IMG/VR virus record: IMGVR_UViG_3300046507_000667
Coordinates: 185,348 to 249,347 of that record
Reading direction: 5' to 3' (one strand)
DNA length: 64,000 bases
Shown here: positions 11,152-24,779 of the stretch, piece after piece
How the letters are laid out: each line of letters opens with the position of its first letter
How positions within the stretch are numbered: the first letter of the stretch is position 1
Program-made: the position numbers and the translations under genes
Notes under the pieces: generated by a model
Databases searched by the model: none
The model's input: only the letters and a program-made list of their open reading frames with translations
What the model was told of the DNA's origin: nothing

Positions 11152-11640
11152 TTAATCAGCTTTCTTGGTATCAGACGCTAGTTCTGGATTAGTACTGCAA
11201 TTTTCACCACGTCGATAAACTTCTTGCTTACGATATGGTAAGAATCCACAAAACTCATACTGATTTACGGTAGTATTTGACATCAGGTCTACTGCCTTTG
11301 AGATGTATGCAGCTACGCCAAAAGGACGAATTACCATAATACCGTCTTTAATAAGCTGCTCAATTGCACGACTAGTAGGAGTACTAAAGAAAGCTACCTT
11401 GCCCACTACTACCTTATTGATTTCATTAAATTCTAGCTCTTTAATTTGGAATACACTATCTTCAATAGAAGGAGCAAATTCATTAGTAAAACGAGCAGGT
11501 AGTTCTGATACACCAACTATACCATTTGGATGCTTTTTATTAAATTCATCAATGGCTTTCTTCAATACTTCAGTTGGATAGATTACACCATTTACATTAG
11601 GTTTATCAGCATGAAGTACTGAATGAAGAGTGAATTCCAT
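11152..11640 (-). CDS. Prohead-protease-like protein (T4 gp21-like N-terminus), probably catalytically inactive
   Basis: LHADKPNVNGVIYPTEVLKKAI resembles the gp21/S77 N-terminal motif; the GELxHP and GVSSRG catalytic motifs are not conserved. Confidence 0.5.
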   Translation of the reverse strand: MEFTLHSVLHADKPNVNGVIYPTEVLKKAIDEFNKKHPNGIVGVSELPARFTNEFAPSIEDSVFQIKELEFNEINKVVVGKVAFFSTPTSRAIEQLIKDGIMVIRPFGVAAYISKAVDLMSNTTVNQYEFCGFLPYRKQEVYRRGENCSTNPELASDTKKAD

Positions 11641-11643
11641 TTA

Positions 11644-13002
11644 TTATCCTTTCACAATAAGAAGTTTGGATACTGCTCGGGTACAGGCCGTATATAACCA
11701 ACGTCGATGAAACGCTTGGTCGCCTAACCGTTCCTCATATACCATCAATTTGTCATATGATGAACCTTGAGATTTGTGGCAAGTAATGCAGTAGCCAAAA
11801 TCCATCTGATAGATATTTTCTTCTTTAGTAAAACCACCGACAATATGAGGTTCATCCTTGTACTTAGTGTACATATTGTCACGAGGAAGAATGGCCTTTA
11901 TTAGACGTTCTTCACCATTATCGCCTCTTAACCTAATAAAATGACGATGACTTTCACTTTGAGCTAAATTAGAATAGTCTTCACCAGAAGTCCATTGTTG
12001 ACCATTGAATACCATATACATCTGTACATTTGACAGACCAATGAGCTTTTCACCCATATATGGCATCTTTTTAACATCATACCCATGTACTTTACGCATA
12101 TGAGTATTGACATTCTTACGAGTCTCATTCTTACCACAAATAATCTGATCAACATACTTCATCATCTTATCAGTGATTTCATCAGCAGATGCTTTAAAGA
12201 CACCGGGACCATATTGACCAAATGGAATCGGTTTACCTTCTCGGATATCTAATGAAAGTCTAATAATTGGTGAGTCTAATGCCTGACGATGGATTTCAGT
12301 AAGCCTATCTTCAGCTTTAACCATGAAATCCTTATCATCAGGATCATTACTAATAGCAGGTAACTGACCTGAGTCACCTACATAGAGTACAGGGATACCG
12401 AATGATTCAATATCCTTACGCATCTTGCTATCGACCATTGATGCTTCATCAACGACGATTAATGAATAAGCATTTCGTACATCATTAGCTGAACGACGTA
12501 CAAAGATTGGCATCATTGCAGATGGATCTTCTAATTCATAGAAAAGCGAATGGATACTGGTAGCTTCAACACCACGCTTTTGAAGAACAAGAGCAGCTTT
12601 CCATGTGAATGTACACACTGCAATATTCTTTTCCTTCATATACGAAGGAAAGGTTTCTTGTGCCGTATTCAAGAAGTATGAGATAACAGCAGTCTTACCA
12701 GTACCAGCAAAACCTGCTAGACGCCTAAATGGAGTACGAGAATTTGGATTCTCATATAACCATTTAAGGATATTTTTTACTGCACCATATTGTTCATCAG
12801 ATAGAGTAAGGTTATACTCTGGTAGCTGAAGAACACGAGTCATCTTACCAAAATCAAAAGTTTCAGTAGGATTATAACTACCATAGGGTGATAGAACATC
12901 TTCTATCTTGAAAGATGCACTACCTTCAAAGAATTTAGCTTCAATATCTCTATTAGCATTCTTATTGACCTTTGGCATTATAGGTAGTGGTTTCAATACC
13001 AT
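11644..13002 (-). CDS. dda: SF1B helicase (Dda/RecD-like)
   Basis: AGFAGTGKT, TSIHSLFY, IVVDEASMV, VGDSGQLP, LTEIHRQ, YCITCHKSQGSSY, YTACTRA. Confidence 0.88.
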   Translation of the reverse strand: MVLKPLPIMPKVNKNANRDIEAKFFEGSASFKIEDVLSPYGSYNPTETFDFGKMTRVLQLPEYNLTLSDEQYGAVKNILKWLYENPNSRTPFRRLAGFAGTGKTAVISYFLNTAQETFPSYMKEKNIAVCTFTWKAALVLQKRGVEATSIHSLFYELEDPSAMMPIFVRRSANDVRNAYSLIVVDEASMVDSKMRKDIESFGIPVLYVGDSGQLPAISNDPDDKDFMVKAEDRLTEIHRQALDSPIIRLSLDIREGKPIPFGQYGPGVFKASADEITDKMMKYVDQIICGKNETRKNVNTHMRKVHGYDVKKMPYMGEKLIGLSNVQMYMVFNGQQWTSGEDYSNLAQSESHRHFIRLRGDNGEERLIKAILPRDNMYTKYKDEPHIVGGFTKEENIYQMDFGYCITCHKSQGSSYDKLMVYEERLGDQAFHRRWLYTACTRAVSKLLIVKG

Positions 13003-13043
13003 TATAATTCCTGATTTATTTGTATAATTATATGTATCTTTTA

Positions 13044-13430
13044 CTAAATCAATCCAAGAAGCTTTAAAGATTCTTCGTATTTTGGTGGAAGCTTGAAATT
13101 GTTTTCAACTCTAACACGAAAACTATAATGCATCTCTCTTTTGATTACATCTTTTTCGAATTGAAAGCTAGATGAATCTAACTCTACAAGAATGGATGCA
13201 ATCTTCATGCTATGAGTAGTACTAACATCAAACTTTTTGTAACCACTATTTTTTAATTTCGTTTCTAGATCAATTAGTAAAATGCTGATAATATGCTGCC
13301 ATGCATCATCAGCTGTAATGAATAACTGATTATCGTGAGTACTAGATTTTTCTTTATGTTTTTGATGATTTAATTCTTCAGTTGCTTTGAATGTTGTAAC
13401 TTCAGTAGTTGTTTTTTGAATAGCGTACAT
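13044..13430 (-). CDS. LP...LKLLG family paralogue (cluster 1)
   Basis: LFITADDA; ends KLPPKYEESLKLLGLI. Confidence 0.8.
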   Translation of the reverse strand: MYAIQKTTTEVTTFKATEELNHQKHKEKSSTHDNQLFITADDAWQHIISILLIDLETKLKNSGYKKFDVSTTHSMKIASILVELDSSSFQFEKDVIKREMHYSFRVRVENNFKLPPKYEESLKLLGLI

Positions 13431-13804
13431 TAGTTTTTTCCCACATTGTATCCATGAAGCTTTAAAATATTTAAAGCATCTTCTGGAATGGTATACATGC
13501 CAACTCCAACAGTAACTGTAATTTGAATTTTAGCATTGGAATCAGGTCTTGCAAGGACAATATGGAAGACACCTCCCATTGAATATTCTTCTTCAATGAA
13601 ACCATCTTGAAAGATTTCACCTTTAATGACTTTTTCTTTGATTTTATGAGCTACTTTAGATAACTCTTCTCTAGCTTGTTCTGGACTAAAGTAGAAGGTA
13701 GAATGATTGTGCCTAGCTTTAGGCTGCATTTCCTCTACTACTTTCTTATTAGGAGTATCAATCTCACGATACCATTGTGTTTCTGAAGAAAGAATATACA
13801 TCAT
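13430..13804 (-). CDS. LP...LKLLG family paralogue (cluster 1)
   Basis: YFSPEQA; TIPEDALNILKLHG. Confidence 0.8.
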   Translation of the reverse strand: MMYILSSETQWYREIDTPNKKVVEEMQPKARHNHSTFYFSPEQAREELSKVAHKIKEKVIKGEIFQDGFIEEEYSMGGVFHIVLARPDSNAKIQITVTVGVGMYTIPEDALNILKLHGYNVGKN

Positions 13805-13805
13805 T

Positions 13806-14183
13806 TTAAGCCTCTATTAGTAGATCAAGCATCTTAAGAGCATTCATATATTCTTCTGGTAGTTGATAATTCCTTTTTTCAATCTCAACAGCAACTACGA
13901 GATTATTCAATGGATTATCATAGTCAATAGTTCTTTGATTTTCATCTCTGACTAATACTGTTGACCATTCTCTATTAGTAACTTTGATGACAGGCCATTG
14001 ATATGGTAACAAATATAGCACTTTGATCTTTTCTACCTCAGCCGCCATTTCTTCTTCCATCTTCTTATGGGCTATTTCTAAGGTAGGACAGATAAGTTCA
14101 CACGCTCTATAAAAAATTCTTTTGGTATCTTGAGCTTTACCAGATCGAGCTAGTGTATGACACTGTACAATTATTCTATACAT
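13806..14183 (-). CDS. LP...LKLLG family paralogue (cluster 1)
   Basis: Start moved to the ATG at 14183 (MYRIIV), coupled to the upstream stop; CPTLEIA; QLPEEYMNALKMLD. Confidence 0.78.
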   Translation of the reverse strand: MYRIIVQCHTLARSGKAQDTKRIFYRACELICPTLEIAHKKMEEEMAAEVEKIKVLYLLPYQWPVIKVTNREWSTVLVRDENQRTIDYDNPLNNLVVAVEIEKRNYQLPEEYMNALKMLDLLIEA

Positions 14184-14718
14184 TGATAGGATATGACCAC
14201 TGAAGAAGAGTTTGACGTTGCCGAGAACGACATTCAAGATCACCCGGTTTACATGCAGCTTGAATTTGAGCTACATGGCGCTTAATACTTAGCCATCGAT
14301 TAATCTGAATCTTATCAGTTTCTGGTTCTCGCCTTCCATAATAAAGACGACAGTACCATTGCATCCAACCTCTTGGATCATTACCATAAATCCAACCATT
14401 CTCTTGCCACTCTTTAAGAGACTTACGAGCTACTAATCCAAAATAGTTTAGTGAGGGATCTCCATGATCACCTTTAGCTTCTTTAGCATGAGTAAACCAG
14501 TTTGAAGGAAATTCATGATGACAATCTCTCATGTATTTACCTTCAAATACTCCCATTTCTAGCATTTGTTTAGGAGTAAAAGCTGGATTGAAATTAGGGT
14601 ATTGCTTTTTGATATCTGATAGATCGCCTTCTGGCATCACCAATTCATATGAATAATTCTTTTGCATCTTATCATTCACATGAATAATCCTACTTCTACT
14701 CTCTAAAAAGATTGCCAT
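14176..14718 (-). CDS. Conserved hypothetical protein (FTPKQMLEMGVF...DPRGWMQWYCR family), unrelated to the flanking array
   Basis: Trp/Arg-rich motifs that I recall from a widespread uncharacterised family of large viruses and bacteria. Confidence 0.75.
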   Translation of the reverse strand: MAIFLESRSRIIHVNDKMQKNYSYELVMPEGDLSDIKKQYPNFNPAFTPKQMLEMGVFEGKYMRDCHHEFPSNWFTHAKEAKGDHGDPSLNYFGLVARKSLKEWQENGWIYGNDPRGWMQWYCRLYYGRREPETDKIQINRWLSIKRHVAQIQAACKPGDLECRSRQRQTLLQWSYPINV

Positions 14719-15072
14719 TTATTCACCTAAAAGCACTAATTTATTAATGATTACATCAGGAAGTCTATGGTGTTTCATATTGATATAGACTGTACAATCT
14801 TTACTACATTCTTCTTCTTTACCACCTTCATATCTTTGAATAAATACTTCTTGATATGTAATTACAATAGTGGTAGGTGTTTGCCGTATTTTTTTATTTC
14901 TTATATTTGGATTATCTACAATATCATCAATCCAAGTATCTAGTGCATATTTCCAAGCAGCATCTTCTTCAGTAAATAATTGAGGAAGATGAAGCTCTAG
15001 AAATTGCTGAGAATTTGGATTATTTGCTGTCTTAGCATAACCATAAGCAGCTAATGCATATACCGTGTTCAT
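14719..15072 (-). CDS. LP...LKLLG family paralogue (cluster 1)
   Basis: LFTEEDAA; RLPDVIINKLVLLGE. Confidence 0.8.
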   Translation of the reverse strand: MNTVYALAAYGYAKTANNPNSQQFLELHLPQLFTEEDAAWKYALDTWIDDIVDNPNIRNKKIRQTPTTIVITYQEVFIQRYEGGKEEECSKDCTVYINMKHHRLPDVIINKLVLLGE

Positions 15073-15464
15073 TATTCTCCTAATAGCATAAGCTTATTAA
15101 TGATTAAATCTGGAAGAACATGGATTCTTATTCTAAAACGAATTTCACATGGAACTATTTGAGAAAAACATTCTGCAGGAGATCCATCTTCTGGAAGTGT
15201 GGCTCTATTAAGCCAATCCATATAGCATACATTTACCGCCATTGGACCTCTAAGAATTTTGAATTCTTTTCCAGTATTTTGTGTTTTAATAAGCTTTGGT
15301 GCCCACTCTTTTTCACAAAAATCTAATGCTTCATCAAAATCTAAAAATAGTTGTGGATGGTTATATATACTATTTGTACTAATATCAAGTATAGGTAATC
15401 CTACTCCTTTAGCTATAGTTGCTTGTATTGCAATTACTTCATGTTTTGGATCATGCATACTCAT
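15072..15464 (-). CDS. LP...LKLLG family paralogue (cluster 1)
   Basis: LFLDFDEA; VLPDLIINKLMLLGE. Confidence 0.8.
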   Translation of the reverse strand: MSMHDPKHEVIAIQATIAKGVGLPILDISTNSIYNHPQLFLDFDEALDFCEKEWAPKLIKTQNTGKEFKILRGPMAVNVCYMDWLNRATLPEDGSPAECFSQIVPCEIRFRIRIHVLPDLIINKLMLLGE

Positions 15465-15798
15465 TCAATCCTAAAATCTGAAGAACTCCTTTTACTTCTT
15501 CAGAAATTTCCATTTTTTGAATAGTAAAAAATGTAATATATCGCCATTGAATTCCACTAACTACTTGAAGCCAAGTTACAAAGCCACCAGTCTTATTTCT
15601 AATTTTTGATATTTCAGAAACATTTTCTTCTAACTTTGCTTCATCAAATTCTAGTTCCATTAATCCGTCAGAAACTGCATTCATTGCTGACTGTTTAGTA
15701 GTAAATAGTTGCTTACGAATTTTAGTACTAAATGGAACGCTAGTTGTATCAAACTGCTCTGGAGTACAACGACGACGTTCGACAATTATGATATACAT
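15451..15798 (-). CDS. LP...LKLLG family paralogue (cluster 1)
   Basis: LFTTKQSA; EISEEVKGVLQILGL. Confidence 0.78.
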   Translation of the reverse strand: MYIIIVERRRCTPEQFDTTSVPFSTKIRKQLFTTKQSAMNAVSDGLMELEFDEAKLEENVSEISKIRNKTGGFVTWLQVVSGIQWRYITFFTIQKMEISEEVKGVLQILGLNEYA

Positions 15799-16199
15799 TA
15801 AAGTAATCCCATTAATTTTAAAGCACTTTCCATTTCAGAAGGAAGATCTACTTTATCCCATGTTAGAATTGCAGTAAATTCAAATTCTTCTTTTATTTGT
15901 TTATAATTTGCTAGAATAAATTTATCATATACTGTTGGAGAATTAGATAAATCTTTCTTTTTTAATGCTACTAAATCTAATGCTTTCCATCTAAAATTAA
16001 AAGCATTGGCATTTGGAGAAGGTTTATTAAAAGAAATAAGATCTTCTTTTGTTTTAGCATAACGTATTAAAATCTCAGCAATTTTTGATTCAGCAAATTC
16101 CTGTGCTTGATCTTTAGTTACAAATAATGGAGAGTAATTTGATTTATCAAATGGAAGTTTATTGTCACTTCTATATAAAGCTTTATTTACAATCCACAT
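15798..16199 (-). CDS. LP...LKLLG family paralogue (cluster 1)
   Basis: LFVTKDQA; DLPSEMESALKLMGLL. Confidence 0.8.
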   Translation of the reverse strand: MWIVNKALYRSDNKLPFDKSNYSPLFVTKDQAQEFAESKIAEILIRYAKTKEDLISFNKPSPNANAFNFRWKALDLVALKKKDLSNSPTVYDKFILANYKQIKEEFEFTAILTWDKVDLPSEMESALKLMGLL

Positions 16200-16534
16200 T
16201 AACTTACTCCATCTTCACCATGTCCCATTAGAGTAAGTAGATTATCTAGTTGAGGACCAAGATGCATTGGTTTAATAGTATATTCAAGATGCAATATAGC
16301 TTTCTCATCATGCTTACTATGCTTTAGATTTGCTCTAATTTCAAGTATTGGATGAGGTGCAATGTAATCTATTATTTCCCGATGCTTTACATGAGGAACA
16401 TGCATTGCAATATTCGCATGAATAGCTGCTTTAGCCTCTGGAATTGAATCAAAAAGATTATTAAAAGAATTAGCAAAGCTGATAAGACCATCGCTATCAC
16501 GCTTTACCATATGTACGCCATATTGAATAATCAT
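16199..16534 (-). CDS. LP...LKLLG family paralogue (cluster 1)
   Basis: LFDSIPEA; HLGPQLDNLLTLMG. Confidence 0.78.
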   Translation of the reverse strand: MIIQYGVHMVKRDSDGLISFANSFNNLFDSIPEAKAAIHANIAMHVPHVKHREIIDYIAPHPILEIRANLKHSKHDEKAILHLEYTIKPMHLGPQLDNLLTLMGHGEDGVS

Positions 16535-16830
16535 GACCGAAGTTCCTCTGGTAGCTTAAGTCCACCAATAATATGATACGTTCTATTGATTTTCCAATTA
16601 TTGCTAATTTCAATATCAATAGAAGCTGCTGAACCAACAATTTTTAGTCTTGCTCGATTCTCATCAATTTTAGTTTTTAATTCATATGAAACTTTCTTGA
16701 TATAATGGGGAAATACAACTTCTCTAATATAGTTTGCAGCAGAAGCTTGATCTAAAAAAGTTTGCTTTTCAATATCAAAATCAATCTGTGGCTTATCTTT
16801 TTCTTTCGAATAGCTTAAAATAACAAACAT
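16531..16830 (-). CDS. LP...LKLLG family paralogue with truncated C-terminal motif (cluster 1)
   Basis: TFLDQASA; ends KLPEELRS-stop. Confidence 0.7.
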   Translation of the reverse strand: MFVILSYSKEKDKPQIDFDIEKQTFLDQASAANYIREVVFPHYIKKVSYELKTKIDENRARLKIVGSAASIDIEISNNWKINRTYHIIGGLKLPEELRS

Positions 16831-16932
16831 AGATTTCTCTAAAAATAATGAAAAATAAAGAAAAAAGTAGCTCTCTTACGAGCTACTCACAAGTCTGGCC
16901 ATTACTTGTTTTGGTACTACTTTTGTATTACC

Positions 16933-17418
16933 TTACAGGACAGTTTCGAAACCGACCCGAGGTGTATATTTTTTAATATAGAAAAGCACCTTCCGAATTG
17001 CTGCTAATGCTGCTACCTTGCAAACCCCCGACATGGATTCATAACGAGTAAACCGAAGTTTACCCAGATCCTCATTCTGGTATTTCAGATCCAGAAAACC
17101 TACTAACCGCATATTTGTAGGAGTCAGGAGCCAAAATTCTTCATAGAGGCCAATATCAGGTACTTCGTTGATAGATGGCTTATGAAGATTCATATGCCTA
17201 TCATCTGGTGAGTAGATGAAGGCAATCCCTGTCATGCGAAATGCATCTTGTGCAGTTCGGGTCTTTAGATTCAAAGACCAACCATGAAGGGCTTCCGCCA
17301 AAGACGGAGCTACACAGATACGCTTGGTAGCTACGTCCTCCCCGGTGGCGCAAAACATCGGTACTCTTGGAATAAATTCACAGTTGCTTCCAAGATATTT
17401 GGTGCTGATGTGATACAT
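16933..17418 (-). CDS. Hypothetical protein, possible ADP-ribosyltransferase-like fold
   Basis: YHIS...FIPRVP...ED..TKRICVAPSL...EEFWL pattern; the fold assignment is inference. Confidence 0.45.
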   Translation of the reverse strand: MYHISTKYLGSNCEFIPRVPMFCATGEDVATKRICVAPSLAEALHGWSLNLKTRTAQDAFRMTGIAFIYSPDDRHMNLHKPSINEVPDIGLYEEFWLLTPTNMRLVGFLDLKYQNEDLGKLRFTRYESMSGVCKVAALAAIRKVLFYIKKYTPRVGFETVL

Positions 17419-17514
17419 TAAGTTTGATCTCTTTTTTAGTAAATCACAGGTACATCAACGAGGTACTACATTATTATAATATATTTATATTTCTCTTTTT
17501 GATTCTAAAATAAA

Positions 17515-18435
17515 ATGGCAAACGATTTAAAGGCAATTGTACCAATTACCACTAGTGGAAGAAAAAGAGCAGTAGTTATCCGCCGTGATGACCCAATGCT
17601 TCAGGGTCGGATTGGTGTATTAATTCCTGAACTAATGCCTTTTGCAGATCCAAATAGTGCAGATTCTCTTGAGGTAGCAGAGAATATTGATCCAAGTTTA
17701 GCAGCTAATAAAGACATCAAACCATTAATTCCATCTAAAGTAGTTACTACAAACTATGTCTGGGCTAGACCGCCTAAAGATAGTAAAGGCTCATATGATG
17801 TTCCATATAAAGGACAAACTGTGTGGGTAGAGATGGAAGATGGCGATCCATCTAAATTATACTATATGACTACTGGACCTTCACTAAATGGTGAAACTCC
17901 ACCAGTAGATCAAATTAGTGATACTAATTCAGCATACAATGCTGCTAGAAAGCCTAATATTACTATTCTCAAGTCATGGGCCGATGGTTCAATCATGTAC
18001 TATAATGAGAATGGTGATACTCGTGAATTTGTAGTTAAATTTGCAAATCAAGCAGGTATTACTGTAGCTGACAATGGATCAGACAAAAAAGTCGAGTTTA
18101 GAACAGCTAGGAATGACTTCTGTACTTTGAATGAAAAAGAGCAGAATATTACTATTCAGACTGCTGGTGGACACTCAGCTATTCTAGATGATAAGAACAA
18201 AGCTATCACTACAAAATCTAGTGGAGGTCACAGTGTCAAACTAGATGATGGCGGCTCTAATATTAGTATTGATTCTTCTGGTGGACATTCATTAACTATG
18301 GATGATGGTGGTGGAAATGTTACTATCAAAGAAAAGTCAGGCAATACTCTTATTATGAATGCTGGAGGAATCCAAATGACTGGTAATGGTGGTGCTAAGA
18401 TGACTATGAAGGATGGTAAAGTTTTATTTAACTAA
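17515..18435 (+). CDS. Baseplate central spike / gp5-VgrG-GpV-like protein
   Basis: OB-fold DDPMLQGRIGVLIP...VPYKGQTVWVEMEDGDP plus beta-helix repeats TAGGHSAILDD, SSGGHSVKLDD, SSGGHSLTMDD. Confidence 0.8.
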   Translation: MANDLKAIVPITTSGRKRAVVIRRDDPMLQGRIGVLIPELMPFADPNSADSLEVAENIDPSLAANKDIKPLIPSKVVTTNYVWARPPKDSKGSYDVPYKGQTVWVEMEDGDPSKLYYMTTGPSLNGETPPVDQISDTNSAYNAARKPNITILKSWADGSIMYYNENGDTREFVVKFANQAGITVADNGSDKKVEFRTARNDFCTLNEKEQNITIQTAGGHSAILDDKNKAITTKSSGGHSVKLDDGGSNISIDSSGGHSLTMDDGGGNVTIKEKSGNTLIMNAGGIQMTGNGGAKMTMKDGKVLFN

Positions 18436-18457
18436 AAAAAACAACGAAGTTCATAAA

Positions 18458-18487
18458 CCCCTATACCCCCGAAAGGAGGTATAGGGA
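18458..18487. terminator. CCCTATAC-family bidirectional terminator
   Basis: Between convergent ORFs ending at 18435 (+) and 18506 (-). Confidence 0.85.
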
Positions 18488-18505
18488 GTTTTACAAACTA
18501 ACTAC

Positions 18506-19378
18506 TTACTTTGCAAACTTGGATTGCAATGCAGTAAGTGATTCAGCCGATGGTGCTGTTACGGCCTTCTTTGTCGTCTTCTTTGCAACTGCCTTCTTAA
18601 CAGGAGCTTTTACTACAACTGCTTCAGCTTCTGCCGCAGCCTCAACTACATCACTGATTTCTTCAGCGATATTGAGTGCAGGTGCTTCAACCTTCTTAGC
18701 AGGAGCCTTCTTCTTTGCAGGAACCTTCTTAGCTACTGAAACAGCATCGGTAACAGTTTCTGCTTGGACTTCAGCTTCTTGAACTGTTTCTGCCTTTTCT
18801 TCAGCAAATACCTTTGCAACCTTCACAGGCTTTTCTGCTTGCTTATTATAAGGCTTCTTTGCATACGGTTGCTTTGCTGCAGGCTTCTTATTGAATTGAG
18901 TTGCCGGATCAAAATTCTTATTACCAGCAAAGTTCCAATTGCTTGGGAACCCTTCAAATTCAACGATGGTATCAGGAATATTACGAATATTCGATACCAG
19001 ATACTGACCAAGAACGCTTGCACCAAGAACATGTACTTCAACTTCTTCATTCGTAAGAGCAGCAAGTTCAGTAACAGTCTTGATAAGACCGAATACCAAG
19101 AAGTTATTGACGATTGTTTCAGGAGTGAAAGTACGTTCAATAACTTCAGTTGAACTTGTATTACCGTAGTTACGGCTACGTTCATTAATTACCTTCATAC
19201 CACCATCAAGCTGCTGCTTGAACATGTTACGCATGAAAATAGGAAGACGACGACCATCACCGTGAAATGGTGACAGAGTAATGGCATCTGCAGGAATACC
19301 AGCAACTTCAGCAGCGTAGTGAACGACGAGTTTCAGTTTTTGGTTGATAGCAGCATTAGTCATTTTAGATAAATCCAA
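18506..19378 (-). CDS. Hypothetical protein with histone H1-like Lys/Ala/Pro-rich C-terminal tail
   Basis: AKKVPAKKKAPAKK and APVKKAVAKKTTKKA repeats; own promoter motif. Confidence 0.7.
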   Translation of the reverse strand: MDLSKMTNAAINQKLKLVVHYAAEVAGIPADAITLSPFHGDGRRLPIFMRNMFKQQLDGGMKVINERSRNYGNTSSTEVIERTFTPETIVNNFLVFGLIKTVTELAALTNEEVEVHVLGASVLGQYLVSNIRNIPDTIVEFEGFPSNWNFAGNKNFDPATQFNKKPAAKQPYAKKPYNKQAEKPVKVAKVFAEEKAETVQEAEVQAETVTDAVSVAKKVPAKKKAPAKKVEAPALNIAEEISDVVEAAAEAEAVVVKAPVKKAVAKKTTKKAVTAPSAESLTALQSKFAK

Positions 19379-19483
19379 GTTAGTTTGTATTTGAATAGAA
19401 GGGGTACTACAAATAGGAGCTTTGAATACTATATTGGTATTGTGCTCACTAAAATAATATATACTTATTCAGTAAGTTAAATT

Positions 19484-19822
19484 TTACAAAACACCAGTAC
19501 GACGGAATTGCAATACCTTGTCAAGCATAATACAAAGCTTATTATCTTCAGTAAGCTGACGACGACGATCTGTATTTGGTACTACTTGTTTACCTTCATA
19601 GACTTGCAGCATGTTAATATCCTTATAACCCGGATATTGATCATACTGTTCTTGAGTGTAAATGAATGAAATTACATCATATTCGATTCCACCTTCAATA
19701 GTGAAACGAACTTCTTCATTGAATTCAATAAGAATAGGCTTCTTATGCTCAGTATTAATTGTATCATGGAGCTTTAAAAGACCAAGACTATCGGTTACTG
19801 CAATAAGTTCTGGAAGACGCAT
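19484..19822 (-). CDS. Hypothetical protein
   Basis: 112-aa ORF at the end of the cluster-2 operon; lacks the family motif. Confidence 0.7.
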   Translation of the reverse strand: MRLPELIAVTDSLGLLKLHDTINTEHKKPILIEFNEEVRFTIEGGIEYDVISFIYTQEQYDQYPGYKDINMLQVYEGKQVVPNTDRRRQLTEDNKLCIMLDKVLQFRRTGVL

Positions 19823-19824
19823 TT

Positions 19825-20244
19825 TTATCCTAGAAGTTTAAGTTTATTTGCAATTACTGGTGGAAGCTCAAGCATATGTATAGTCCAATATGCCGGATTG
19901 GTACAATTTTTCAAATTTCTAAAAATGAAATCCGCTGAAAGACTACCACTAAATTCAGCCCAACCATTATTACGAAAGAATAAATGAATCAGATTACCTT
20001 CATGAATTGCTTTGTATTTAGGGGCATATTCTTTCCATTCTTCTTCAATGTCTTCAAAAAATGGAATAAGCTGTGATTCTAAGATATGCTTTTTATAAAC
20101 ACGAGATAAAATATCGTTTACTGCCTCTTGATATGTAGCATAACCGCATTCTTTTCCATCTTCATTACAAACTGTTTCTTGACTTGTTAGTTTTCCTTGG
20201 TTATTAAGCTCATACTGTCTTACATAGTAAATTTCAGTATTCAT
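19825..20244 (-). CDS. LP...LKLLG family paralogue (cluster 2)
   Basis: GYATYQEA; ELPPVIANKLKLLG. Confidence 0.8.
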   Translation of the reverse strand: MNTEIYYVRQYELNNQGKLTSQETVCNEDGKECGYATYQEAVNDILSRVYKKHILESQLIPFFEDIEEEWKEYAPKYKAIHEGNLIHLFFRNNGWAEFSGSLSADFIFRNLKNCTNPAYWTIHMLELPPVIANKLKLLG

Positions 20245-20245
20245 C

Positions 20246-20593
20246 TTATAATCCTAGCAAACTAATGGTATTGACTAATTCTAAAGGAAGTTCAATTTCT
20301 TTGATATTGAAATAGAACTTATTTTCATCTGAACTGTAATCTTGATATTCATTTTCTTTATACTTGATTACAAAATTTCTTTCATCAGAAGAATTGAAAA
20401 GAGAAAACTTTTCTTCATCTAGTTCACTACCAATAGAAAGAGTCATTCTTACTTTGGGATAAAGTACTTCCCTAATAAATTTGACAGCATCTTCTAGTTT
20501 TAGAAAACTACGATAATGCCAAATATTATCTGCTTTAGTAAGATCATGTAGCTTACTAATTGGAGCATTCTCCATTATTGCAAAGATATTCAT
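20246..20593 (-). CDS. LP...LKLLG family paralogue (cluster 2)
   Basis: SFLKLEDA; ELPLELVNTISLLGL. Confidence 0.8.
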   Translation of the reverse strand: MNIFAIMENAPISKLHDLTKADNIWHYRSFLKLEDAVKFIREVLYPKVRMTLSIGSELDEEKFSLFNSSDERNFVIKYKENEYQDYSSDENKFYFNIKEIELPLELVNTISLLGL

Positions 20594-20961
20594 CCAAGTA
20601 CTTTGAGCTTATTAGCTACTGCTTGTGGAAGGTAAATTTCTTCTATATCGAACCAATATTTGACACAATCTGTAGTTATTCTTTTTACATCTAATGTCTT
20701 AAGATCTAAATTTGGATGGTATTCTATTGCAGCCGTATCTGAATTGACTCCATATACAGGCAAGAAATCTACATATCGCATCTTTCCTAAACTATCTTTA
20801 ACCATCCTGTCAATTGTAGCTGGAATCCATAATTCCTTAATAGCTGTCATTGCATCTTCAACAGTTTCAAAACTAATTAGATTAGTCGTTCCAGGAAGAG
20901 GTAAAATTGCAGACAGTTTTGAAAGAGTTCCATTACCTTTCACTACAAATACTTTTTCCAT
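20590..20961 (-). CDS. LP...LKLLG family paralogue (cluster 2)
   Basis: SFETVEDA; YLPQAVANKLKVLG. Confidence 0.8.
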   Translation of the reverse strand: MEKVFVVKGNGTLSKLSAILPLPGTTNLISFETVEDAMTAIKELWIPATIDRMVKDSLGKMRYVDFLPVYGVNSDTAAIEYHPNLDLKTLDVKRITTDCVKYWFDIEEIYLPQAVANKLKVLG

Positions 20962-21275
20962 TATGATAATACTTCTATAAAAGGAATTAATTCGGTAGGT
21001 GCTCTAAGTTTACTAATAATGTATGTCAATACAACTCTATTTTGTGAAGAACCATAGTGCTTATGTGATAGCATTATAAAACGATAGCAATTTGACCCTT
21101 CAGTGGTGTGCATCTCGTATTTTTCATTTACATGAGATTTTTTCCATTCTTCAAAACGCCATTCAATTTCTTTTATGCATTCTTCTACAGTCAATGCTGA
21201 AAAGCTATGATCAACATCCGGTTCTTTATAAGGAGGTCGAACTACTTCAAGAAAATAGATGTATTTCTTCGTCAT
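20961..21275 (-). CDS. LP...LKLLG family paralogue, divergent (cluster 2)
   Basis: SALTVEEC; RAPTELIPFIEVLS. Confidence 0.65.
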   Translation of the reverse strand: MTKKYIYFLEVVRPPYKEPDVDHSFSALTVEECIKEIEWRFEEWKKSHVNEKYEMHTTEGSNCYRFIMLSHKHYGSSQNRVVLTYIISKLRAPTELIPFIEVLS

Positions 21276-21634
21276 AGTACCTTAAGGATATTTGAAACTT
21301 CTTTTGGATAAGGCATCTTACCATAGCTATAAGAAAACATGCATGCTTCCTTATGATACATAGTAACATTAGTTGACATTAGCTCAGATACATGAATAAC
21401 TTGCTTATTGTTTACTAGATCATAACTATTGTAATTTTCATTTTTCTTTGAAAAATAATCCTTTTCATCATGCTGTACACCAATAACAGCATGCTTTTCA
21501 ATATCACCAAGAATTGTCTTTCGATGAAAATCTCTTACAAACTCATCTAGTTTTTCTTTGCTGGTGAAGGTTGCTGTAGCAATCTCTTCATAACCCATAC
21601 AAGCTTCAAAGTACCACAAAAATTCGCTATCCAT
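21272..21634 (-). CDS. LP...LKLLG family paralogue (cluster 2)
   Basis: TFTSKEKL; PYPKEVSNILKVL. Confidence 0.75.
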   Translation of the reverse strand: MDSEFLWYFEACMGYEEIATATFTSKEKLDEFVRDFHRKTILGDIEKHAVIGVQHDEKDYFSKKNENYNSYDLVNNKQVIHVSELMSTNVTMYHKEACMFSYSYGKMPYPKEVSNILKVL

Positions 21635-21975
21635 TACATACCTAAAAGAGTTAATTGATTAGCTATAATGTCTGGCATTGGAAGCTTGCCCATGATATAC
21701 CTTCCAATTTCAGTATCGGCATACATAACTGTAAATGTTGTATGTGCATTCCAGTCATTACAACTAATTGAATTAGTTTTAAATCTATAGTCGTTTAGAT
21801 CAGTATCTTTGTTAAATTTCCTTTTTATTTTACTTTGATGAGCAAGAATAATCTCTTTATATTTCTTCTGTCGAGCATCATCATACTCATCAATTGTAAG
21901 AAAAGTACGTTTATCTACCTTTGGATGATCAAAAGCTTCAGTATGAATGATATAATAGATTAATCTATCAGTCAT
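21634..21975 (-). CDS. LP...LKLLG family paralogue (cluster 2)
   Basis: TFLTIDEY; PMPDIIANQLTLLGM. Confidence 0.8.
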   Translation of the reverse strand: MTDRLIYYIIHTEAFDHPKVDKRTFLTIDEYDDARQKKYKEIILAHQSKIKRKFNKDTDLNDYRFKTNSISCNDWNAHTTFTVMYADTEIGRYIMGKLPMPDIIANQLTLLGM

Positions 21976-22333
21976 TACTCATTCCTAAAAGCTTAAGTTG
22001 ATTAGATATTTCTTCTGGAAGCTCAATATACCTGATATATATTCTATTGATAGTTTCAGTCTTAGTATCAACTGTAATTTGACCAGAATATGGATCTTTA
22101 CAACGAAAGATTCGATACGCAAACTCATCTCGACCTGCTTCAGTTTCTACATCATAGTCAGATCGAGATAGTTTGTGAGTGTTATATGGTTTTTTATTAT
22201 TACCTTCGATATCCTTAGCAATAATAAGCTCTGCAGCTTTCATAGCTGCTTGATTAGCTTCATCCATTGTGATAAAGCTTTTCTGAACTGACTCAGGACT
22301 GGCTTTGATTTGAATATTCCAAATTGATTTCAT
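21968..22333 (-). CDS. LP...LKLLG family paralogue (cluster 2)
   Basis: SFITMDEA; ELPEEISNQLKLLGM. Confidence 0.8.
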   Translation of the reverse strand: MKSIWNIQIKASPESVQKSFITMDEANQAAMKAAELIIAKDIEGNNKKPYNTHKLSRSDYDVETEAGRDEFAYRIFRCKDPYSGQITVDTKTETINRIYIRYIELPEEISNQLKLLGMSND

Positions 22334-23160
22334 ACACGATGACGGAAAGAGATTTTAGTATCAAAACCATGCTGAAGGATCTTTTGTTTATTATCTACTT
22401 CAGCAGGTGGCTCTTTATCGGGTGAAGTATTAATTACGTTCTGAAAGTAAGCAGTAATACACTTATACATTGAATCTGCATCAATGAACTTAGGAAGACC
22501 AAGTTCTGCAAGATTTGGAATGTATCGATAGATATCATACTGCATATCCAAACGACTTTCTTTAGAATCTTTGTAATTTTGAATCAAAAATACAGGCTGT
22601 TTAAGCTGACGACTGATTTCATCAAGCAATGGATGAGTCTTAAGACTTACCATATCAATACAAGTTTGCTCATAATCAATCAATCGACGGCGATTTTCAT
22701 AACGCTGCTTCTTATGATTATATACAGTATTATGATGCCATACTCGTTGATAAGTCTTTGGAGTGGTATCGGGAAGAATCAATTCACATTTGACCAATTC
22801 ACTATAGTTATCACGAACTTTGACTACAGGAAAGATATTACCACAGATAGAAATCCAACCATAGTAGCCGTCATGAATTTGATCACGATTGGAATAATAA
22901 TCATTATGGAAATGACTAAACCACATCTGTTCCATATTTCTTGCATTCTCAACGAATACAGGAACTACCGAATTCCATTCTCCTTCACGATACTTTTCAT
23001 ACATTTCCTTTTCTTTCTTAGTCTGAGGCCAACTACTCTTCGGTTTATTTCCACGTTGGATCAGATCAATCCGATTATACACAATATTAGTGTCTACACC
23101 GTATACATGAGCCAAGTAATCGTAATAGTCTTTGTTTGCTGAACTAGTATTGATTTTCAT
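22330..23160 (-). CDS. Conserved hypothetical phage protein
   Basis: DYYDY..YGVD..IVY.R N-terminus and DNKQKILQHGFDTKISFRHR C-terminus recalled from many phages; first gene of the cluster-2 operon. Confidence 0.75.
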   Translation of the reverse strand: MKINTSSANKDYYDYLAHVYGVDTNIVYNRIDLIQRGNKPKSSWPQTKKEKEMYEKYREGEWNSVVPVFVENARNMEQMWFSHFHNDYYSNRDQIHDGYYGWISICGNIFPVVKVRDNYSELVKCELILPDTTPKTYQRVWHHNTVYNHKKQRYENRRRLIDYEQTCIDMVSLKTHPLLDEISRQLKQPVFLIQNYKDSKESRLDMQYDIYRYIPNLAELGLPKFIDADSMYKCITAYFQNVINTSPDKEPPAEVDNKQKILQHGFDTKISFRHRV

Positions 23161-23338
23161 ATGGTTCTCTATAGTACAAAGGGGAATTTAAGGGGTTTAA
23201 ATAATTTAATATATTTATTTATATTTTAAACTATTTAAAATCTTTACATAAAAATAATATATTTACAAATTCTATATTAAATTATTTAAAATTTTAAACA
23301 GTTTAAACCTTTTAATAGAAGATTTAAGGAATTTTAAA

Positions 23339-24076
23339 ATGGTTAAAAAAATTAAAAAGGTTGTGGATGATACTTTAATCGACACATCCTTAGTTATCGA
23401 AGCACCTAAAAGACCTGAGCCGGACGAAGAGGAATTTGATCCTACAAAATCCATCAAAGTAGACATTGATAATCTGGAACCAGATGACGACAATATTGAG
23501 ATTTTAGGAAAAAATCAACAATATTCATTGACGATGTATCTTGACAAAAATGTCGATGCATCTACATATGTAAAGTTTATCAAAGCTTGTGAACGAGGAA
23601 TTCGTTCTAATGAAGATTATAAGCTTTATTTAGATTCTTTACGTGAATTGGATTTCTTTTGTCAAGATGCTTTCTTATCAAAGATTACATCAATGGATGC
23701 TGAAATTCAAATTCATCACCATCCTCTTACATTATATTCTATTACTTCAGCTATTGTCTCTAAGATGTTAGACTCTGGAGAAAAGGTATCATCATTTATT
23801 GTAGCTGATCGAGTTCTTAATCTACATTTTACCAATCAAGTTGGTCTGACTCCATTGACAGTTACCAATCATGAATTAGCCCACATGAACCAATTGAAGC
23901 TTCAACGTAGGCAGATCTTTGGTAATTGGGAGAAGTTCTTTGAGGAACATCGTGGTTATTTCAATGATTACGATAGAGAAGTAGTAAAGACTCTAGTAGA
24001 ACGTGTTAGGATTGAACGTTCAGATGATACTGTAAAGCAAATCGGTTATTCTAAGAAGGAGCAAGAAAATGGCTGA
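23339..24076 (+). CDS. HNH-like (His-Me) protein, paralogue 1
   Basis: GIRSNEDYKLYL...EIQIHHHPLTLY...VGLTPLTVTNHELAH. Confidence 0.6.
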   Translation: MVKKIKKVVDDTLIDTSLVIEAPKRPEPDEEEFDPTKSIKVDIDNLEPDDDNIEILGKNQQYSLTMYLDKNVDASTYVKFIKACERGIRSNEDYKLYLDSLRELDFFCQDAFLSKITSMDAEIQIHHHPLTLYSITSAIVSKMLDSGEKVSSFIVADRVLNLHFTNQVGLTPLTVTNHELAHMNQLKLQRRQIFGNWEKFFEEHRGYFNDYDREVVKTLVERVRIERSDDTVKQIGYSKKEQENG

Positions 24077-24779
24077 AGAAAGTAAAGCAGTACCATATAG
24101 TAAATTTCAGCCTGACTTTGACTACTATGGTAAACCAGCATTCTATGCAGAAATGCAGCTTCTTGACAATGAGAAGAATAAAGAAAAATTCGTTAAATCT
24201 ATTGAACGAGCTATCCGTACCTCTCCAGAATATAGAAACTACATTAAATATCTAAAGACTGAGGCATTACTTAACTACTGTGTACTTATGGGAGCAATGC
24301 CTGAAGAAGTTGCACAGAAACTTAAGATTGAAATGCACCACTGTCCAATTACACTTTATGATCTAGTAGATACAGTTCTTATTAAATATCTAGTATTGGA
24401 CAAGCCTTTCACACGTCTATCAATTGCTAATGAAGTAATGGATGCGCACTTCATGTCTAATATTGGTATCGTGCCAATGACTGTAACTGCACATCAGATG
24501 GCTCATAAAGGTGTAAAACTTATTAAACCTACTGATATCTTTGGTAATTTCCATCGATTTTTAGAACAATATGAAAACTTTGTACCAGAGGAAACTCGTA
24601 GTAAAGTTGCTGGACTCCTAGCTCTTAAGTCTGAATTTGTCGAAACTATTCGAGAGAATGTATTGACTGTAGATGAGAAGTTATTCATTGAAGATGATCT
24701 AAAGAATTATTATCGTCTAGAGTTTAATATGGAGCCTCAAGAAGTTTCTGAGGATGAAGAAAAAGAAAACGATGACTGA
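24069..24779 (+). CDS. HNH-like (His-Me) protein, paralogue 2
   Basis: AIRTSPEYRNYI...KIEMHHCPITLY...IGIVPMTVTAHQMAH. Confidence 0.6.
   Translation: MAEESKAVPYSKFQPDFDYYGKPAFYAEMQLLDNEKNKEKFVKSIERAIRTSPEYRNYIKYLKTEALLNYCVLMGAMPEEVAQKLKIEMHHCPITLYDLVDTVLIKYLVLDKPFTRLSIANEVMDAHFMSNIGIVPMTVTAHQMAHKGVKLIKPTDIFGNFHRFLEQYENFVPEETRSKVAGLLALKSEFVETIRENVLTVDEKLFIEDDLKNYYRLEFNMEPQEVSEDEEKENDD

What the first reader, a model, noticed from the sequence alone, without database searches (positions are those of the whole stretch)
13044..22333. Sixteen-member tandem family of divergent small proteins with a shared C-terminal LPxxxxNxLKLLG motif
Seen in sequence: nine ORFs in 13044-16830 and seven in 19825-22333, each about 100-140 aa, translationally coupled by overlapping stop/start codons. 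All share an N-terminal aromatic-hydrophobic strand (MY.I), an F-x-T/S-x-E/D-E/D-A motif (FITADDA, FVTKDQA, FETVEDA, FITMDEA) and a terminal helix (LPPKYEESLKLLG, LPDVIINKLVLLG, LPPVIANKLKLLG, LPEEISNQLKLLG, MPDIIANQLTLLG), while the middles show no evident similarity. Both clusters lie in operons downstream of the early motif (17476, 23254). Inference: a constant docking helix plus a hypervariable surface is the architecture of an adaptor or effector library. Members could bind different host targets (defence proteins, regulators) and deliver them to one common partner, or hetero-oligomerise through the tail. This is the best candidate for an undescribed system in the window.
Basis: partly seen in the sequence, partly recalled or inferred. 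Interest (0 to 1): 0.85.

Follow-up and report, generated by a model that had tools for sequence, protein, structure and literature searches.

The report
Orphan tandem small-protein family, jumbo phage
An uncultivated giant phage related to Yersinia phage phiR1-37 carries two tandem arrays, 16 genes in all, of a previously undescribed small soluble protein with conserved ends and a fast-changing middle; it is probably a diversified host-interaction repertoire, but nothing yet shows what it binds.

Summary
The ORFs are real. All are on the minus strand and tightly coupled. The C-terminal motif LPxxhxNxLKLLG is far beyond chance. The N-terminal motifs give only weak statistical signal. Leave-one-out tests recover 13 of 16 members; m02, m08 and m13 rest on position, size and eye, and m09 has lost most of the tail.

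AlphaFold gives one compact fold (b-b-a-b-b-b-a) with no convincing PDB or viral match. There is no Pfam, PHROG, NCBIfam or PADLOC hit. A profile search of 1.84 billion proteins returns only this phage and near-identical metagenome contigs. phiR1-37, the closest isolate, has none.

Orthologues evolve 2-9 times faster (dN/dS 0.18-0.54) than neighbouring genes, with identity valleys in gene middles and a sharp mosaic breakpoint near one gene junction.

The conserved motifs sit at helix caps, so they look fold-determining. The LLG codons also supply the next gene's Shine-Dalgarno. The "early motif" is the general phiR1-37-type promoter, which does not indicate timing.

Best reading: a new, lineage-specific, diversifying multigene family, probably host-interaction proteins. 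The docking-helix adaptor idea is neither supported nor excluded.

The parts
13044..13430 (-). m01, 128 aa, tail LPPKYEESLKLLG
   Evidence: Leave-one-out HMM E 1.3e-6. Orthologues in L003 and L004 are 83% identical, dN/dS 0.32 overall and 0.06 in the tail.
13430..13804 (-). m02, 124 aa, tail IPEDALNILKLHG. Weak member.
   Evidence: Not recovered by any leave-one-out test. The L003 orthologue is 71% identical, dN/dS 0.18.
13806..14183 (-). m03, 125 aa from the ATG (the ORF runs up to a GTG at 14243), tail LPEEYMNALKMLD
   Evidence: Tail PSSM leave-one-out score 18.2, above all decoys. The L003 orthologue is only 48% identical, dN/dS 0.54.
14176..14718 (-). Non-member 180-aa gene interrupting cluster 1. 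It belongs to a widespread conserved hypothetical family.
   Evidence: No family HMM hit. 454 homologues at 57-66% identity and 63 unrelated metagenome loci. 96% identical to the L003 orthologue, dN/dS 0.11.
14719..15072 (-). m04, 117 aa, tail LPDVIINKLVLLG. This is the modelled member.
   Evidence: AF2 pLDDT 89.4, pTM 0.75, topology b-b-a-b-b-b-a. phmmer pair with m05, E 1e-9.
15072..15464 (-). m05, 130 aa, tail LPDLIINKLMLLG
15451..15798 (-). m06, 115 aa, degenerate tail ISEEVKGVLQILG
   Evidence: Full-length leave-one-out E 4.1e-5. The tail alone is not recovered.
15798..16199 (-). m07, 133 aa, tail LPSEMESALKLMG
   Evidence: (E 1.3e-3)
16199..16534 (-). m08, 111 aa, tail LGPQLDNLLTLMG. Weak member.
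   Evidence: Not recovered in leave-one-out tests.
16531..16830 (-). m09, 99 aa, first gene of cluster 1. The tail is cut after LPEELRS by the stop that overlaps the m08 start.
   Evidence: leave-one-out E 4e-3
16865..16888 (-). Terminator-like hairpin between the 161-aa gene and m09
16933..17418 (-). 161-aa gene heading the cluster-1 transcription unit. Has homologues in phiKZ-like phages.
   Evidence: phrog_25542 E 6e-13; 38% identity to Pseudomonas phage PA7
17476..17487 (-). Phage promoter core TAAATATATTAT
11644..13002 (-). Dda/RecD-like helicase, 41 nt downstream of m01, same strand, with no promoter motif between
   Evidence: 55% identity to phiR1-37 g286
19825..20244 (-). m10, 139 aa, tail LPPVIANKLKLLG
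   Evidence: leave-one-out PSSM 28.3
20246..20593 (-). m11, 115 aa, tail LPLELVNTISLLG
   Evidence: phmmer pair with m12, E 8e-6; leave-one-out E 1.5e-7
20590..20961 (-). m12, 123 aa, tail LPQAVANKLKVLG
20961..21275 (-). m13, 104 aa, degenerate tail APTELIPFIEVLS. Weak member. A mosaic breakpoint lies at about 21235-21260.
   Evidence: Not recovered in leave-one-out tests. The L075 orthologue is 71% identical with dS about 1.0, next to m14 at 97%.
21272..21634 (-). m14, 120 aa, tail YPKEVSNILKVL
21634..21975 (-). m15, 113 aa, tail MPDIIANQLTLLG
   Evidence: phmmer pair with m16
21968..22333 (-). m16, 121 aa, tail LPEEISNQLKLLG. This is the modelled member.
   Evidence: AF2 pLDDT 75. It has the same terminal elements as m04, and residues 51-67 are low-confidence. 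Leave-one-out E 1.2e-8.
22330..23160 (-). 276-aa gene heading the cluster-2 operon. Its stop overlaps the m16 start.
   Evidence: phrog_4243
23254..23265 (-). Phage promoter core TAAATATATTAT upstream of the 276-aa gene
19484..19822 (-). 112-aa non-member gene closing cluster 2. Its Shine-Dalgarno is supplied by the LLG codons of m10.

Best explanation
Shown:
- The genes are a lineage-specific multigene family in an uncultivated jumbo phage of about 249 kb, distantly related to phiR1-37. The 16 members lie in two co-oriented arrays.
- Adjacent genes are each other's closest relatives, which points to old tandem duplications.
- Each member is a soluble single-domain a/b protein of about 100-140 aa, with predicted topology b1-b2-a1-b3-b4-b5-a2.
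- Orthologues in related contigs diverge fast. Part of that divergence is mosaic, with identity valleys in gene middles and higher identity at gene junctions.

Inferred, structure:
- The conserved pieces are the elements that define the fold: the N-terminal hairpin, the FxTxEDA helix cap, the last strand, the LP helix start and the amphipathic terminal helix with its Gly cap.
- The LLG codons also provide the ribosome-binding site that couples translation to the next gene.
- The region between a1 and b5 varies in length and sequence and is the diversified surface.

Inferred, function:
- The members act as stoichiometric binders of host proteins, in host take-over or counter-defence, each recognising a different or variant target.
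- They are held in a tightly coupled array so that the whole repertoire is made together.
- A shared docking partner is not required by the data.
For: Family is real.

Common confident fold: (pLDDT 89.4 for m04).

Soluble: no 19-residue hydrophobic window above 1.6. pI is mostly 4.9-6.5.

Genes are under selection yet fast-evolving: dN/dS is 0.32, 0.18, 0.54, 0.19, 0.18 and 0.22 in members, against 0.06 for the helicase and 0.11 for ORF180. The tails are more constrained than the middles.

Mosaic pattern: nucleotide identity falls to 0.44-0.64 in gene middles and is 0.82-0.89 at junctions. Identity steps from about 97% to about 68% at about 21235-21260.

Orphan status: no Pfam, PHROG, NCBIfam or PADLOC hit. 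Only self and near-identical relatives appear among 1.84e9 representatives. The family is absent from all 1143 six-frame ORFs of phiR1-37.

Motifs sit at secondary-structure boundaries: one search read.

Shine-Dalgarno inside the LLG codons.

Precedent: giant phages do carry large tandem paralogue families whose copy number varies, for example SPN3US family B (PMC5694885).
Against: - There is no functional, expression or interaction data. The phage is known only from metagenomes.
- Fold searches give nothing with E below 1e-3 in the PDB (TM at most 0.32), and only uncharacterised viral proteins in BFVD (TM at most 0.5). No known inhibitor or anti-defence fold supports the functional guess.
- Known phage anti-defence genes are rarely paralogous arrays (own knowledge).
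- The terminal helix keeps E4, N7 and L11 on the face opposite its hydrophobic stripe. A purely structural role does not obviously require that.
- The two AF2 models share one alignment, so their agreement is not independent.
- Raised dS in gene middles shows that part of the 'fast evolution' is recombination between old alleles, not necessarily positive selection.
Confidence: 0.45

Rival explanations
1. Adaptor or effector library. The C-terminal helix is a constant docking element for one shared partner, either a host or phage machine or other family members. The variable body selects different cargo.
For: - The tail is the most conserved element across both clusters.
- It is under stronger purifying selection than the rest.
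- The helix carries conserved residues on a second face, E4/N7/L11, besides the hydrophobic 5/9/12 stripe.
Against: - The helix is modelled as an integral, confident part of the domain directly after the last strand, not as a tethered peptide.
- P at the helix start and G at its end are ordinary capping residues.
- The G codon is also constrained as the Shine-Dalgarno of the next gene.
- m09 lacks most of the tail, and m06 and m13 have degenerate tails, yet all remain intact ORFs.
- No candidate partner was identified.
Confidence: 0.15
2. Packaged internal or ejection proteins. The family is loaded into the capsid and injected with the DNA, as with the T4 internal proteins or SPN3US head paralogue family B. 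The conserved end acts as a capsid-targeting or anchoring element.
For: - In giant phages the known large tandem paralogue families are head proteins with very variable copy number (PMC5694885).
- T4 internal proteins are small, hypervariable between relatives and share a short constant terminal signal (own knowledge; also summarised in PMC5694885).
- The phiR1-37 helicase orthologue, whose counterpart here follows cluster 1, rises late in infection.
Against: - There is no homology to SPN3US family B, whose members are 275-498 aa.
- The conserved element is C-terminal, not an N-terminal cleavable signal.
- phiR1-37 protease sites read LQE|S and LTE|E. The family has no conserved such site, and two members have no [SAGTL]xE at all.
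- The proteins are mildly acidic or neutral, not DNA-condensing.
Confidence: 0.15
3. Subunits of one homo- or hetero-oligomeric assembly. The paralogues co-assemble through the terminal helix into a mixed complex, and tight translational coupling ensures co-production.
For: - Strict coupling and a shared Shine-Dalgarno-in-tail architecture.
- Two-faced conservation of the terminal helix.
Against: - Sixteen very divergent subunits (12-30% identity), with orthologues at 48-97% identity between close relatives, is not the pattern of a co-evolving complex.
Confidence: 0.1
4. The tail is a sliding-clamp-binding peptide of the QL[SD]LF / QLxLxL type, so the family competes for the host beta clamp.
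For: m15 and m16 read QLTLL and QLKLL near the C-terminus. Phage proteins that bind the clamp are known (own knowledge).
Against: - Q occupies that position in only 2 of 15 tails; K, A and I are as common.
- The segment is predicted helical and packed, not an extended flexible peptide.
- The distance to the C-terminus varies from 0 to 7 residues.
Confidence: 0.03

Closest known systems
SPN3US head 'paralog family B' (gp83, gp138-154, gp161, gp237), with 2 members in phiKZ
   Same: A large, mostly tandem, paralogous family in a giant phage that carries phiKZ-type split RNA polymerases. Copy number is very variable between relatives and the function is unknown (PMC5694885).
   Different: No sequence similarity. 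Members are 275-498 aa rather than 99-139 aa. They are proven virion head proteins, whereas the location of this family is unknown.
T4-type internal proteins (IPI, IPII, IPIII and the variable IP loci) with the capsid-targeting sequence
   Same: Small proteins in tandem, hypervariable between close relatives, sharing only a short constant terminal element. At least IPI is a counter-defence protein (own knowledge).
   Different: The constant element there is an N-terminal peptide of about 10 residues, cut off by the prohead protease at (L/I)xE. Here the conserved element is a C-terminal helix plus fold-core motifs, and no conserved cleavage site exists.
Multigene families of large eukaryotic DNA viruses (poxvirus ankyrin/PRANC proteins, ASFV MGF360/505)
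   Same: Tandem expansions of one scaffold with diversified surfaces, linked to host range and immune evasion. In the PRANC case a constant C-terminal module docks on one host partner.
   Different: Unrelated folds and hosts. No F-box or ankyrin signal in Pfam. A shared partner is not shown here.
Arrays of small coupled genes of unknown function in phiR1-37 (g001-g044, g182-g186, g317-g324, g339-g366)
   Same: Same genome style: long runs of overlapping genes of 60-140 aa behind the ATATATTAT promoter.
   Different: None of those matches this family (best E 0.3). They were not tested here for similarity to one another.

Membership tests
Any curated protein family (Pfam-A, PHROGs v4, NCBIfam, PADLOC) | Profile match at or near the curated threshold | tested here: not met
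   There are no Pfam hits below E 0.017, and all of those are far under the gathering score. PHROGs gives only two stray hits, E 0.0024 and 0.0099, in single members. NCBIfam gives none. PADLOC gives one stray hit at E 0.029.
T4 internal proteins / capsid-targeting-sequence system | Conserved N-terminal targeting peptide of about 10 residues | tested here: not met
   The conserved element is C-terminal. The N-terminal signal is weak.
T4 internal proteins / capsid-targeting-sequence system | Prohead-protease cleavage site ((L/I)xE in T4; LQE|S and LTE|E in phiR1-37) at a conserved position | tested here: not met
   Sites are scattered and not aligned. m08 and m15 have none.
T4 internal proteins / capsid-targeting-sequence system | Presence in the mature capsid and ejection into the host | not testable with these tools
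   The phage is known only from metagenome contigs.
SPN3US paralog family B | Sequence homology detectable by profile search | tested here: not met
   The family HMM against 13 SPN3US members (gp142-gp154) gives best E 1.2 with a negative bit score.
Longin / roadblock-type a/b domains (same b-b-a-b-b-b-a order) | Structural superposition with a significant score | tested here: inconclusive
   TRAPP/sedlin, Ykt6 longin, FLCN-FNIP and Rag C-terminal domains appear among the hits, but with E of 0.04 or more and TM 0.2-0.3.
Beta-clamp-binding-motif proteins | QL[SD]LF or QLxLxL in a flexible terminal peptide | tested here: not met
   Q is at the required position in 2 of 15 tails. The segment is predicted as a packed helix.
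Adaptor families with a constant docking module (PRANC/F-box-like logic) | One shared partner bound through the constant module | not testable with these tools
   No multimer prediction or interaction data were available. Only two structure jobs were allowed.
Tandemly expanded, diversifying viral multigene family (the kind this is filed under) | Paralogy, tandem arrangement with nearest neighbours most similar, purifying selection with elevated rate, lineage restriction | tested here: met

The most novel reading that the evidence does not exclude
The arrays are a cassette-type repertoire. A constant scaffold and C-terminal helix plug every member into one shared partner or into each other. The middles are exchanged between co-circulating phages by recombination at the conserved gene junctions. 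This would give the phage a shuffling library of target-specific adaptors or inhibitors against host defences, a phage counterpart of the docking-module multigene families of poxviruses.
Probability: 0.12. Interest if true: 0.8.

Novelty: new variant of a known kind. Interest (0 to 1): 0.5.

Why it matters
[quoted passage not shown] Sixteen copies of one orphan fold is therefore an unusual investment: about 5.8 kb, or 2.3% of a 249-kb genome.

The family combines three features:
- a conserved scaffold;
- a middle that diverges 2-9 times faster than neighbouring genes;
- mosaic exchange near gene junctions.

That is the signature expected of a repertoire engaged with variable host targets. If partners can be found, it would give a tractable example of how giant phages diversify host-interaction proteins.

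The dual use of the conserved LLG codons as the next gene's ribosome-binding site is a caution. Part of a 'protein motif' in coupled arrays can be held by the mRNA.

Tried and rejected
- Megablast of the region against 50,697 phage records, and tblastn of m16 at E up to 10, found no match.
- The search for related loci with the family alignment failed because no stretch was conserved enough.
- The helicase in IMG/VR found only the source contig.
- A helicase alignment in metagenome contigs found nothing.
- ORF180 as bait gave 63 loci. None carries family members, so it is an unrelated widespread gene.
- The whole phiR1-37 genome was fetched and scanned with full-length and tail profiles and a regex. 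Nothing was found.
- An HMM against PDB sequences gave best E 6.3.
- Foldseek against PDB and BFVD gave no informative match.
- Homology to SPN3US paralog family B was rejected.
- A conserved prohead-protease site was rejected.
- The clamp-binding motif was rejected.
- Nucleotide-level conservation as the sole cause of the tail motif was rejected. Leu codons vary and synonymous changes accumulate in the tails. CTT use in tails (48%) is only slightly above the genome level (36%).
- The 13 SNPs against the 99.88%-identical contig L002 were uninformative. Only one falls in the family: I to R in the m13 tail.
- Literature searches for tandem paralogue families in jumbo phages returned little beyond the SPN3US paper.

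Full report
**Source**

The window is the terminal 64 kb or so of a 249,347-bp viral contig, IMGVR_UViG_3300046507_000667. GC content is about 35%. Its Dda/RecD-like helicase (11644-13002, minus strand) is 55% identical to g286 of Yersinia phage phiR1-37, which is by far the closest isolate. The window also encodes a split RNA-polymerase beta-like subunit and a protein shared with phiKZ-like phages. It is therefore an uncultivated jumbo phage of the phiR1-37 type.

**Check of the observation: ORFs**

The ORF list shows sixteen ORFs of 99-139 aa on the minus strand at the stated coordinates. Nine are in 13044-16830 and seven in 19825-22333. Junctions are 1-14 nt overlaps or 1-nt gaps.

The first block also holds a tenth gene, 14176-14718 (180 aa). 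It is not a member. It belongs to a widespread conserved hypothetical family with 454 homologues at 57-66% identity, some named from Alphaproteobacteria MAGs. It occurs in 63 unrelated metagenome loci, none of which has family members nearby.

**Check of the observation: is it a family?**

- Single-sequence searches link only three adjacent pairs: m04/m05, m11/m12 and m15/m16.
- Leave-one-out profiles recover 12 of 16 members at E below 0.01. Across the sixteen runs only two decoys scored at all; one reversed sequence reached E 0.0021, close to the left-out m07 at E 0.0013.
- A profile of cluster 1 and a profile of cluster 2, which are independent sets, align over 25 tail columns with E 2.8e-6.
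- A leave-one-out PSSM of the 12-13-residue tail puts 9 of 15 tails above all 2252 non-members and decoys.
- Taken together, 13 of 16 members pass at least one non-circular test.
- m02, m08 and m13 do not. They are members only by position, size, coupling and an eye-level motif.
- m09 ends at LPEELRS, so most of its tail is missing.

The N-terminal motifs are much weaker. Cross-cluster profiles of the first 60 residues give no individually significant hit, only enrichment: 5 of 9 cluster-1 members are in the top 14 of 2079 sequences.

**The 'early motif'**

T[AG]AATATATTAT occurs 13 times in the window against 3 expected. It usually lies in intergenic DNA ahead of genes on either strand. Its core ATATATTAT is the core of the promoters annotated in phiR1-37.

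In phiR1-37, RNA-seq confirmed 56 such promoters and found no sequence difference between early and late ones (PMC4848604). Genes behind them are mostly constitutive, and the helicase orthologue is classed as late. The motif is therefore a promoter, but it says nothing about timing.

A terminator-like hairpin (16865-16888) lies between promoter 17476 and cluster 1, with no recognisable promoter after it. Cluster 1 runs on into the helicase gene without a promoter motif between them.

**Structure**

With the 19-sequence family alignment, AlphaFold2 models m04 with pLDDT 89.4 and pTM 0.75 as b1-b2-a1-b3-b4-b5-a2. It models m16 with pLDDT 75, with the same terminal elements and a low-confidence middle at residues 51-67. 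The two models share one alignment, so their agreement is not independent.

I read the motifs against the m04 model:
- FxTxEDA sits at the b2-to-a1 junction and has the form of an S/T-x-x-E helix N-cap.
- LP sits at the b5-to-a2 junction, with the Pro at the helix start.
- The final G closes the helix.

These are the local signals that very diverged homologues of one fold typically retain.

Foldseek finds nothing with E below 1e-3 in the PDB, and TM is at most 0.32. Longin, roadblock, PAS and CaMKII-hub type a/b domains appear only as weak topological echoes. BFVD gives only uncharacterised phage and giant-virus proteins, with TM at most 0.5.

The proteins have no hydrophobic segment long enough for a membrane span. 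They are mostly mildly acidic.

**The tail in detail**

Anchored on the Pro, the counts over 15 tails are: L10 at position 1, P13 at 2, E7 at 4, a hydrophobic residue at 5, N11 at 7, L13 at 9, K8 at 10, L10 at 11, L12 at 12 and G12 at 13.

On a helical wheel, positions 5, 9 and 12 form one hydrophobic stripe. Positions 4, 7 and 11 (E, N, L) lie on the opposite face. One face presumably packs on the sheet. The other could contact helix a1 or a partner, and I could not inspect coordinates to decide.

The codons of LLG (TTA or CTA followed by GGA or GGT) form AGGA or AGGT 4-8 nt before the next ATG at most junctions. Where the tail is longer, another Gly or Glu codon does the same job. So the terminal Gly and its fixed distance from the stop are also constrained by translational coupling.

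The rest of the tail is conserved at protein level. Leu codons vary, and between orthologues the tail accumulates synonymous but few non-synonymous changes. In the last 25 codons of m01 there are 7.0 synonymous against 2.0 non-synonymous differences.

**Distribution**

- There is no curated family match.
- A profile search that reads all 1.84 billion representative proteins returns 16 hits. Fifteen are the window's own members or variants (P0004, P0005, P0007, P0014) whose contigs are 85-99.9% identical at nucleotide level. The sixteenth is a repetitive 1586-aa protein that looks spurious.
- So there are no further members elsewhere in this genome and none in any other known lineage, within the reach of a weak profile.
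- All 1143 six-frame ORFs of the complete phiR1-37 genome were scanned. The best E is 0.3.

**Evolution**

Three short contigs from other samples carry orthologues: L003, L004 and L075. L002 is the same phage at 99.88% identity.

| Gene | dN/dS | Amino-acid identity |
|---|---|---|
| m01 | 0.32 | 83% |
| m02 | 0.18 | 71% |
| m03 | 0.54 | 48% |
| m13 (partial) | 0.22 | 71% |
| m14 | 0.18 | 97% |
| m15 | 0.19 | 96% |
| helicase | 0.06 | 95-96% |
| ORF180 | 0.11 | 96% |

The genes are thus under purifying selection, so they are real genes, but they evolve several times faster than their neighbours.

Divergence is mosaic. In L075, identity steps from about 97% (m15, m14) to about 68% at 21235-21260, just inside m13. 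dS jumps from about 0.1 to about 1.0.

In L003, nucleotide identity falls to 0.44-0.64 in the middle of each member and is 0.82-0.89 at the junctions. dS is also higher in the middles.

This points to recombination between diverged alleles, with the better-conserved junctions as likely crossover zones, on top of any selection. Gene order (ORF180, m03, m02, m01, helicase) is kept in the relative. No paralogue pair exceeds about 33% identity. The expansion is therefore old, and present-day change is by sequence turnover rather than copy-number change, as far as the short contigs show.

**Interpretation**

Shown: an orphan, tandemly expanded, fast-diversifying family of small soluble proteins with one predicted fold.

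Inferred: the conserved ends are mainly the fold's core plus a coupling signal, and the variable segment between a1 and b5 is the functional surface.

My preferred function is a set of direct binders of host proteins, in take-over or counter-defence. This rests on analogy and on the evolutionary pattern, not on any match, so confidence is 0.45.

A packaged internal-protein role is a serious rival at 0.15, for two reasons:
- The only large tandem paralogue families described in related giant phages are head proteins (SPN3US family B, 20 members; PMC5694885).
- T4 internal proteins show the same 'constant terminal signal plus hypervariable body' logic.

Against it:
- There is no homology to SPN3US family B, whose members are 275-498 aa.
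- The conserved element is at the C-terminus, not the N-terminus.
- No conserved protease site exists.

A clamp-binding-motif reading was considered and rejected.

**Verdict**

The family is new. The kind of thing, a lineage-specific multigene family in a giant phage, is known but poorly understood.

Interest is moderate. It is a clean, testable orphan family with an unusual copy number and a clear diversification signature, but there is no mechanistic evidence yet.

Noticed in passing
window 14176-14718 (-): A 180-aa gene sits inside cluster 1 and belongs to a widespread, well conserved hypothetical family of about 168 aa. It has 454 homologues at 57-66% identity; the few named ones are bacterial MAGs (mostly Alphaproteobacteria such as Sulfitobacter, Actibacterium, Rickettsiales and Sneathiella, plus Pseudomonas marincola). 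A separate scan found 63 metagenome contigs encoding relatives at 41-68% identity. It has no Pfam, NCBIfam or PHROG model. It is 96% identical between relatives, while the family genes on either side diverge to 48%.
   Followed up: partly
window, 13 sites (e.g. 3701, 17476, 23254, 26616, 31928, 58738): The promoter-like motif T[AG]AATATATTAT, usually followed 5 nt later by TG, occurs 13 times against 3 expected. It has the same ATATATTAT core as the promoters annotated in phiR1-37. It lies ahead of genes of all kinds, so it does not mark an early class.
   Followed up: yes
window, gene junctions in 13002-16830 and 19822-22333: The Leu-Leu-Gly codons of the conserved tail (TTA or CTA, then GGA or GGT) form the AGGA/AGGT Shine-Dalgarno of the next gene, 4-8 nt before its ATG. 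Part of a protein motif is thus also an mRNA signal.
   Followed up: yes
window about 21235-21260, against L075; and 13440-14200, against L003: There is a sharp mosaic breakpoint, about 97% to about 68% nt identity, just inside the 5' end of m13. Identity valleys occur in the middle of m01-m03, with peaks at the junctions. Both suggest allele exchange between co-circulating relatives.
   Followed up: partly
window 23339-24076 (+) and 24069-24779 (+): This is a second tandem paralogue pair (245 and 236 aa, both phrog_12252, function unknown). It is transcribed divergently from the cluster-2 promoter region. The second one contains an internal MPEEVAQKLKI stretch that is the best-scoring non-member match to the tail PSSM, probably by chance.
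   Followed up: partly
window 16865-16888 (-): A terminator-like hairpin with a T-run lies between the 161-aa gene and the first gene of cluster 1. No promoter motif follows it. Cluster 1 would therefore depend on read-through or on an unrecognised promoter.
   Followed up: partly
window 18506-19378 (-): A 290-aa ORF (TTG start) has a C-terminal half that is a Lys/Ala/Pro/Val-rich low-complexity stretch (pI 9.3). It is reminiscent of histone-H1-like DNA-binding tails. No PHROG hit.
   Followed up: no
window 17515-18435 (+): A 306-aa ORF between the two clusters, on the opposite strand, ends in repeated GGHS-x-(I/K/T)-(L/M)-DD units. These look like a beta-helical spike of a cell-puncturing device. 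No PHROG hit.
   Followed up: no
window 16933-17418 (-) and 11152-11640 (-): The 161-aa gene heading cluster 1 has homologues (38% identity) in phiKZ-like Pseudomonas phages. The 162-aa gene after the helicase weakly matches a head-maturation-protease PHROG (E 2e-5). This recalls the truncated protease paralogues described in giant phages.
   Followed up: no
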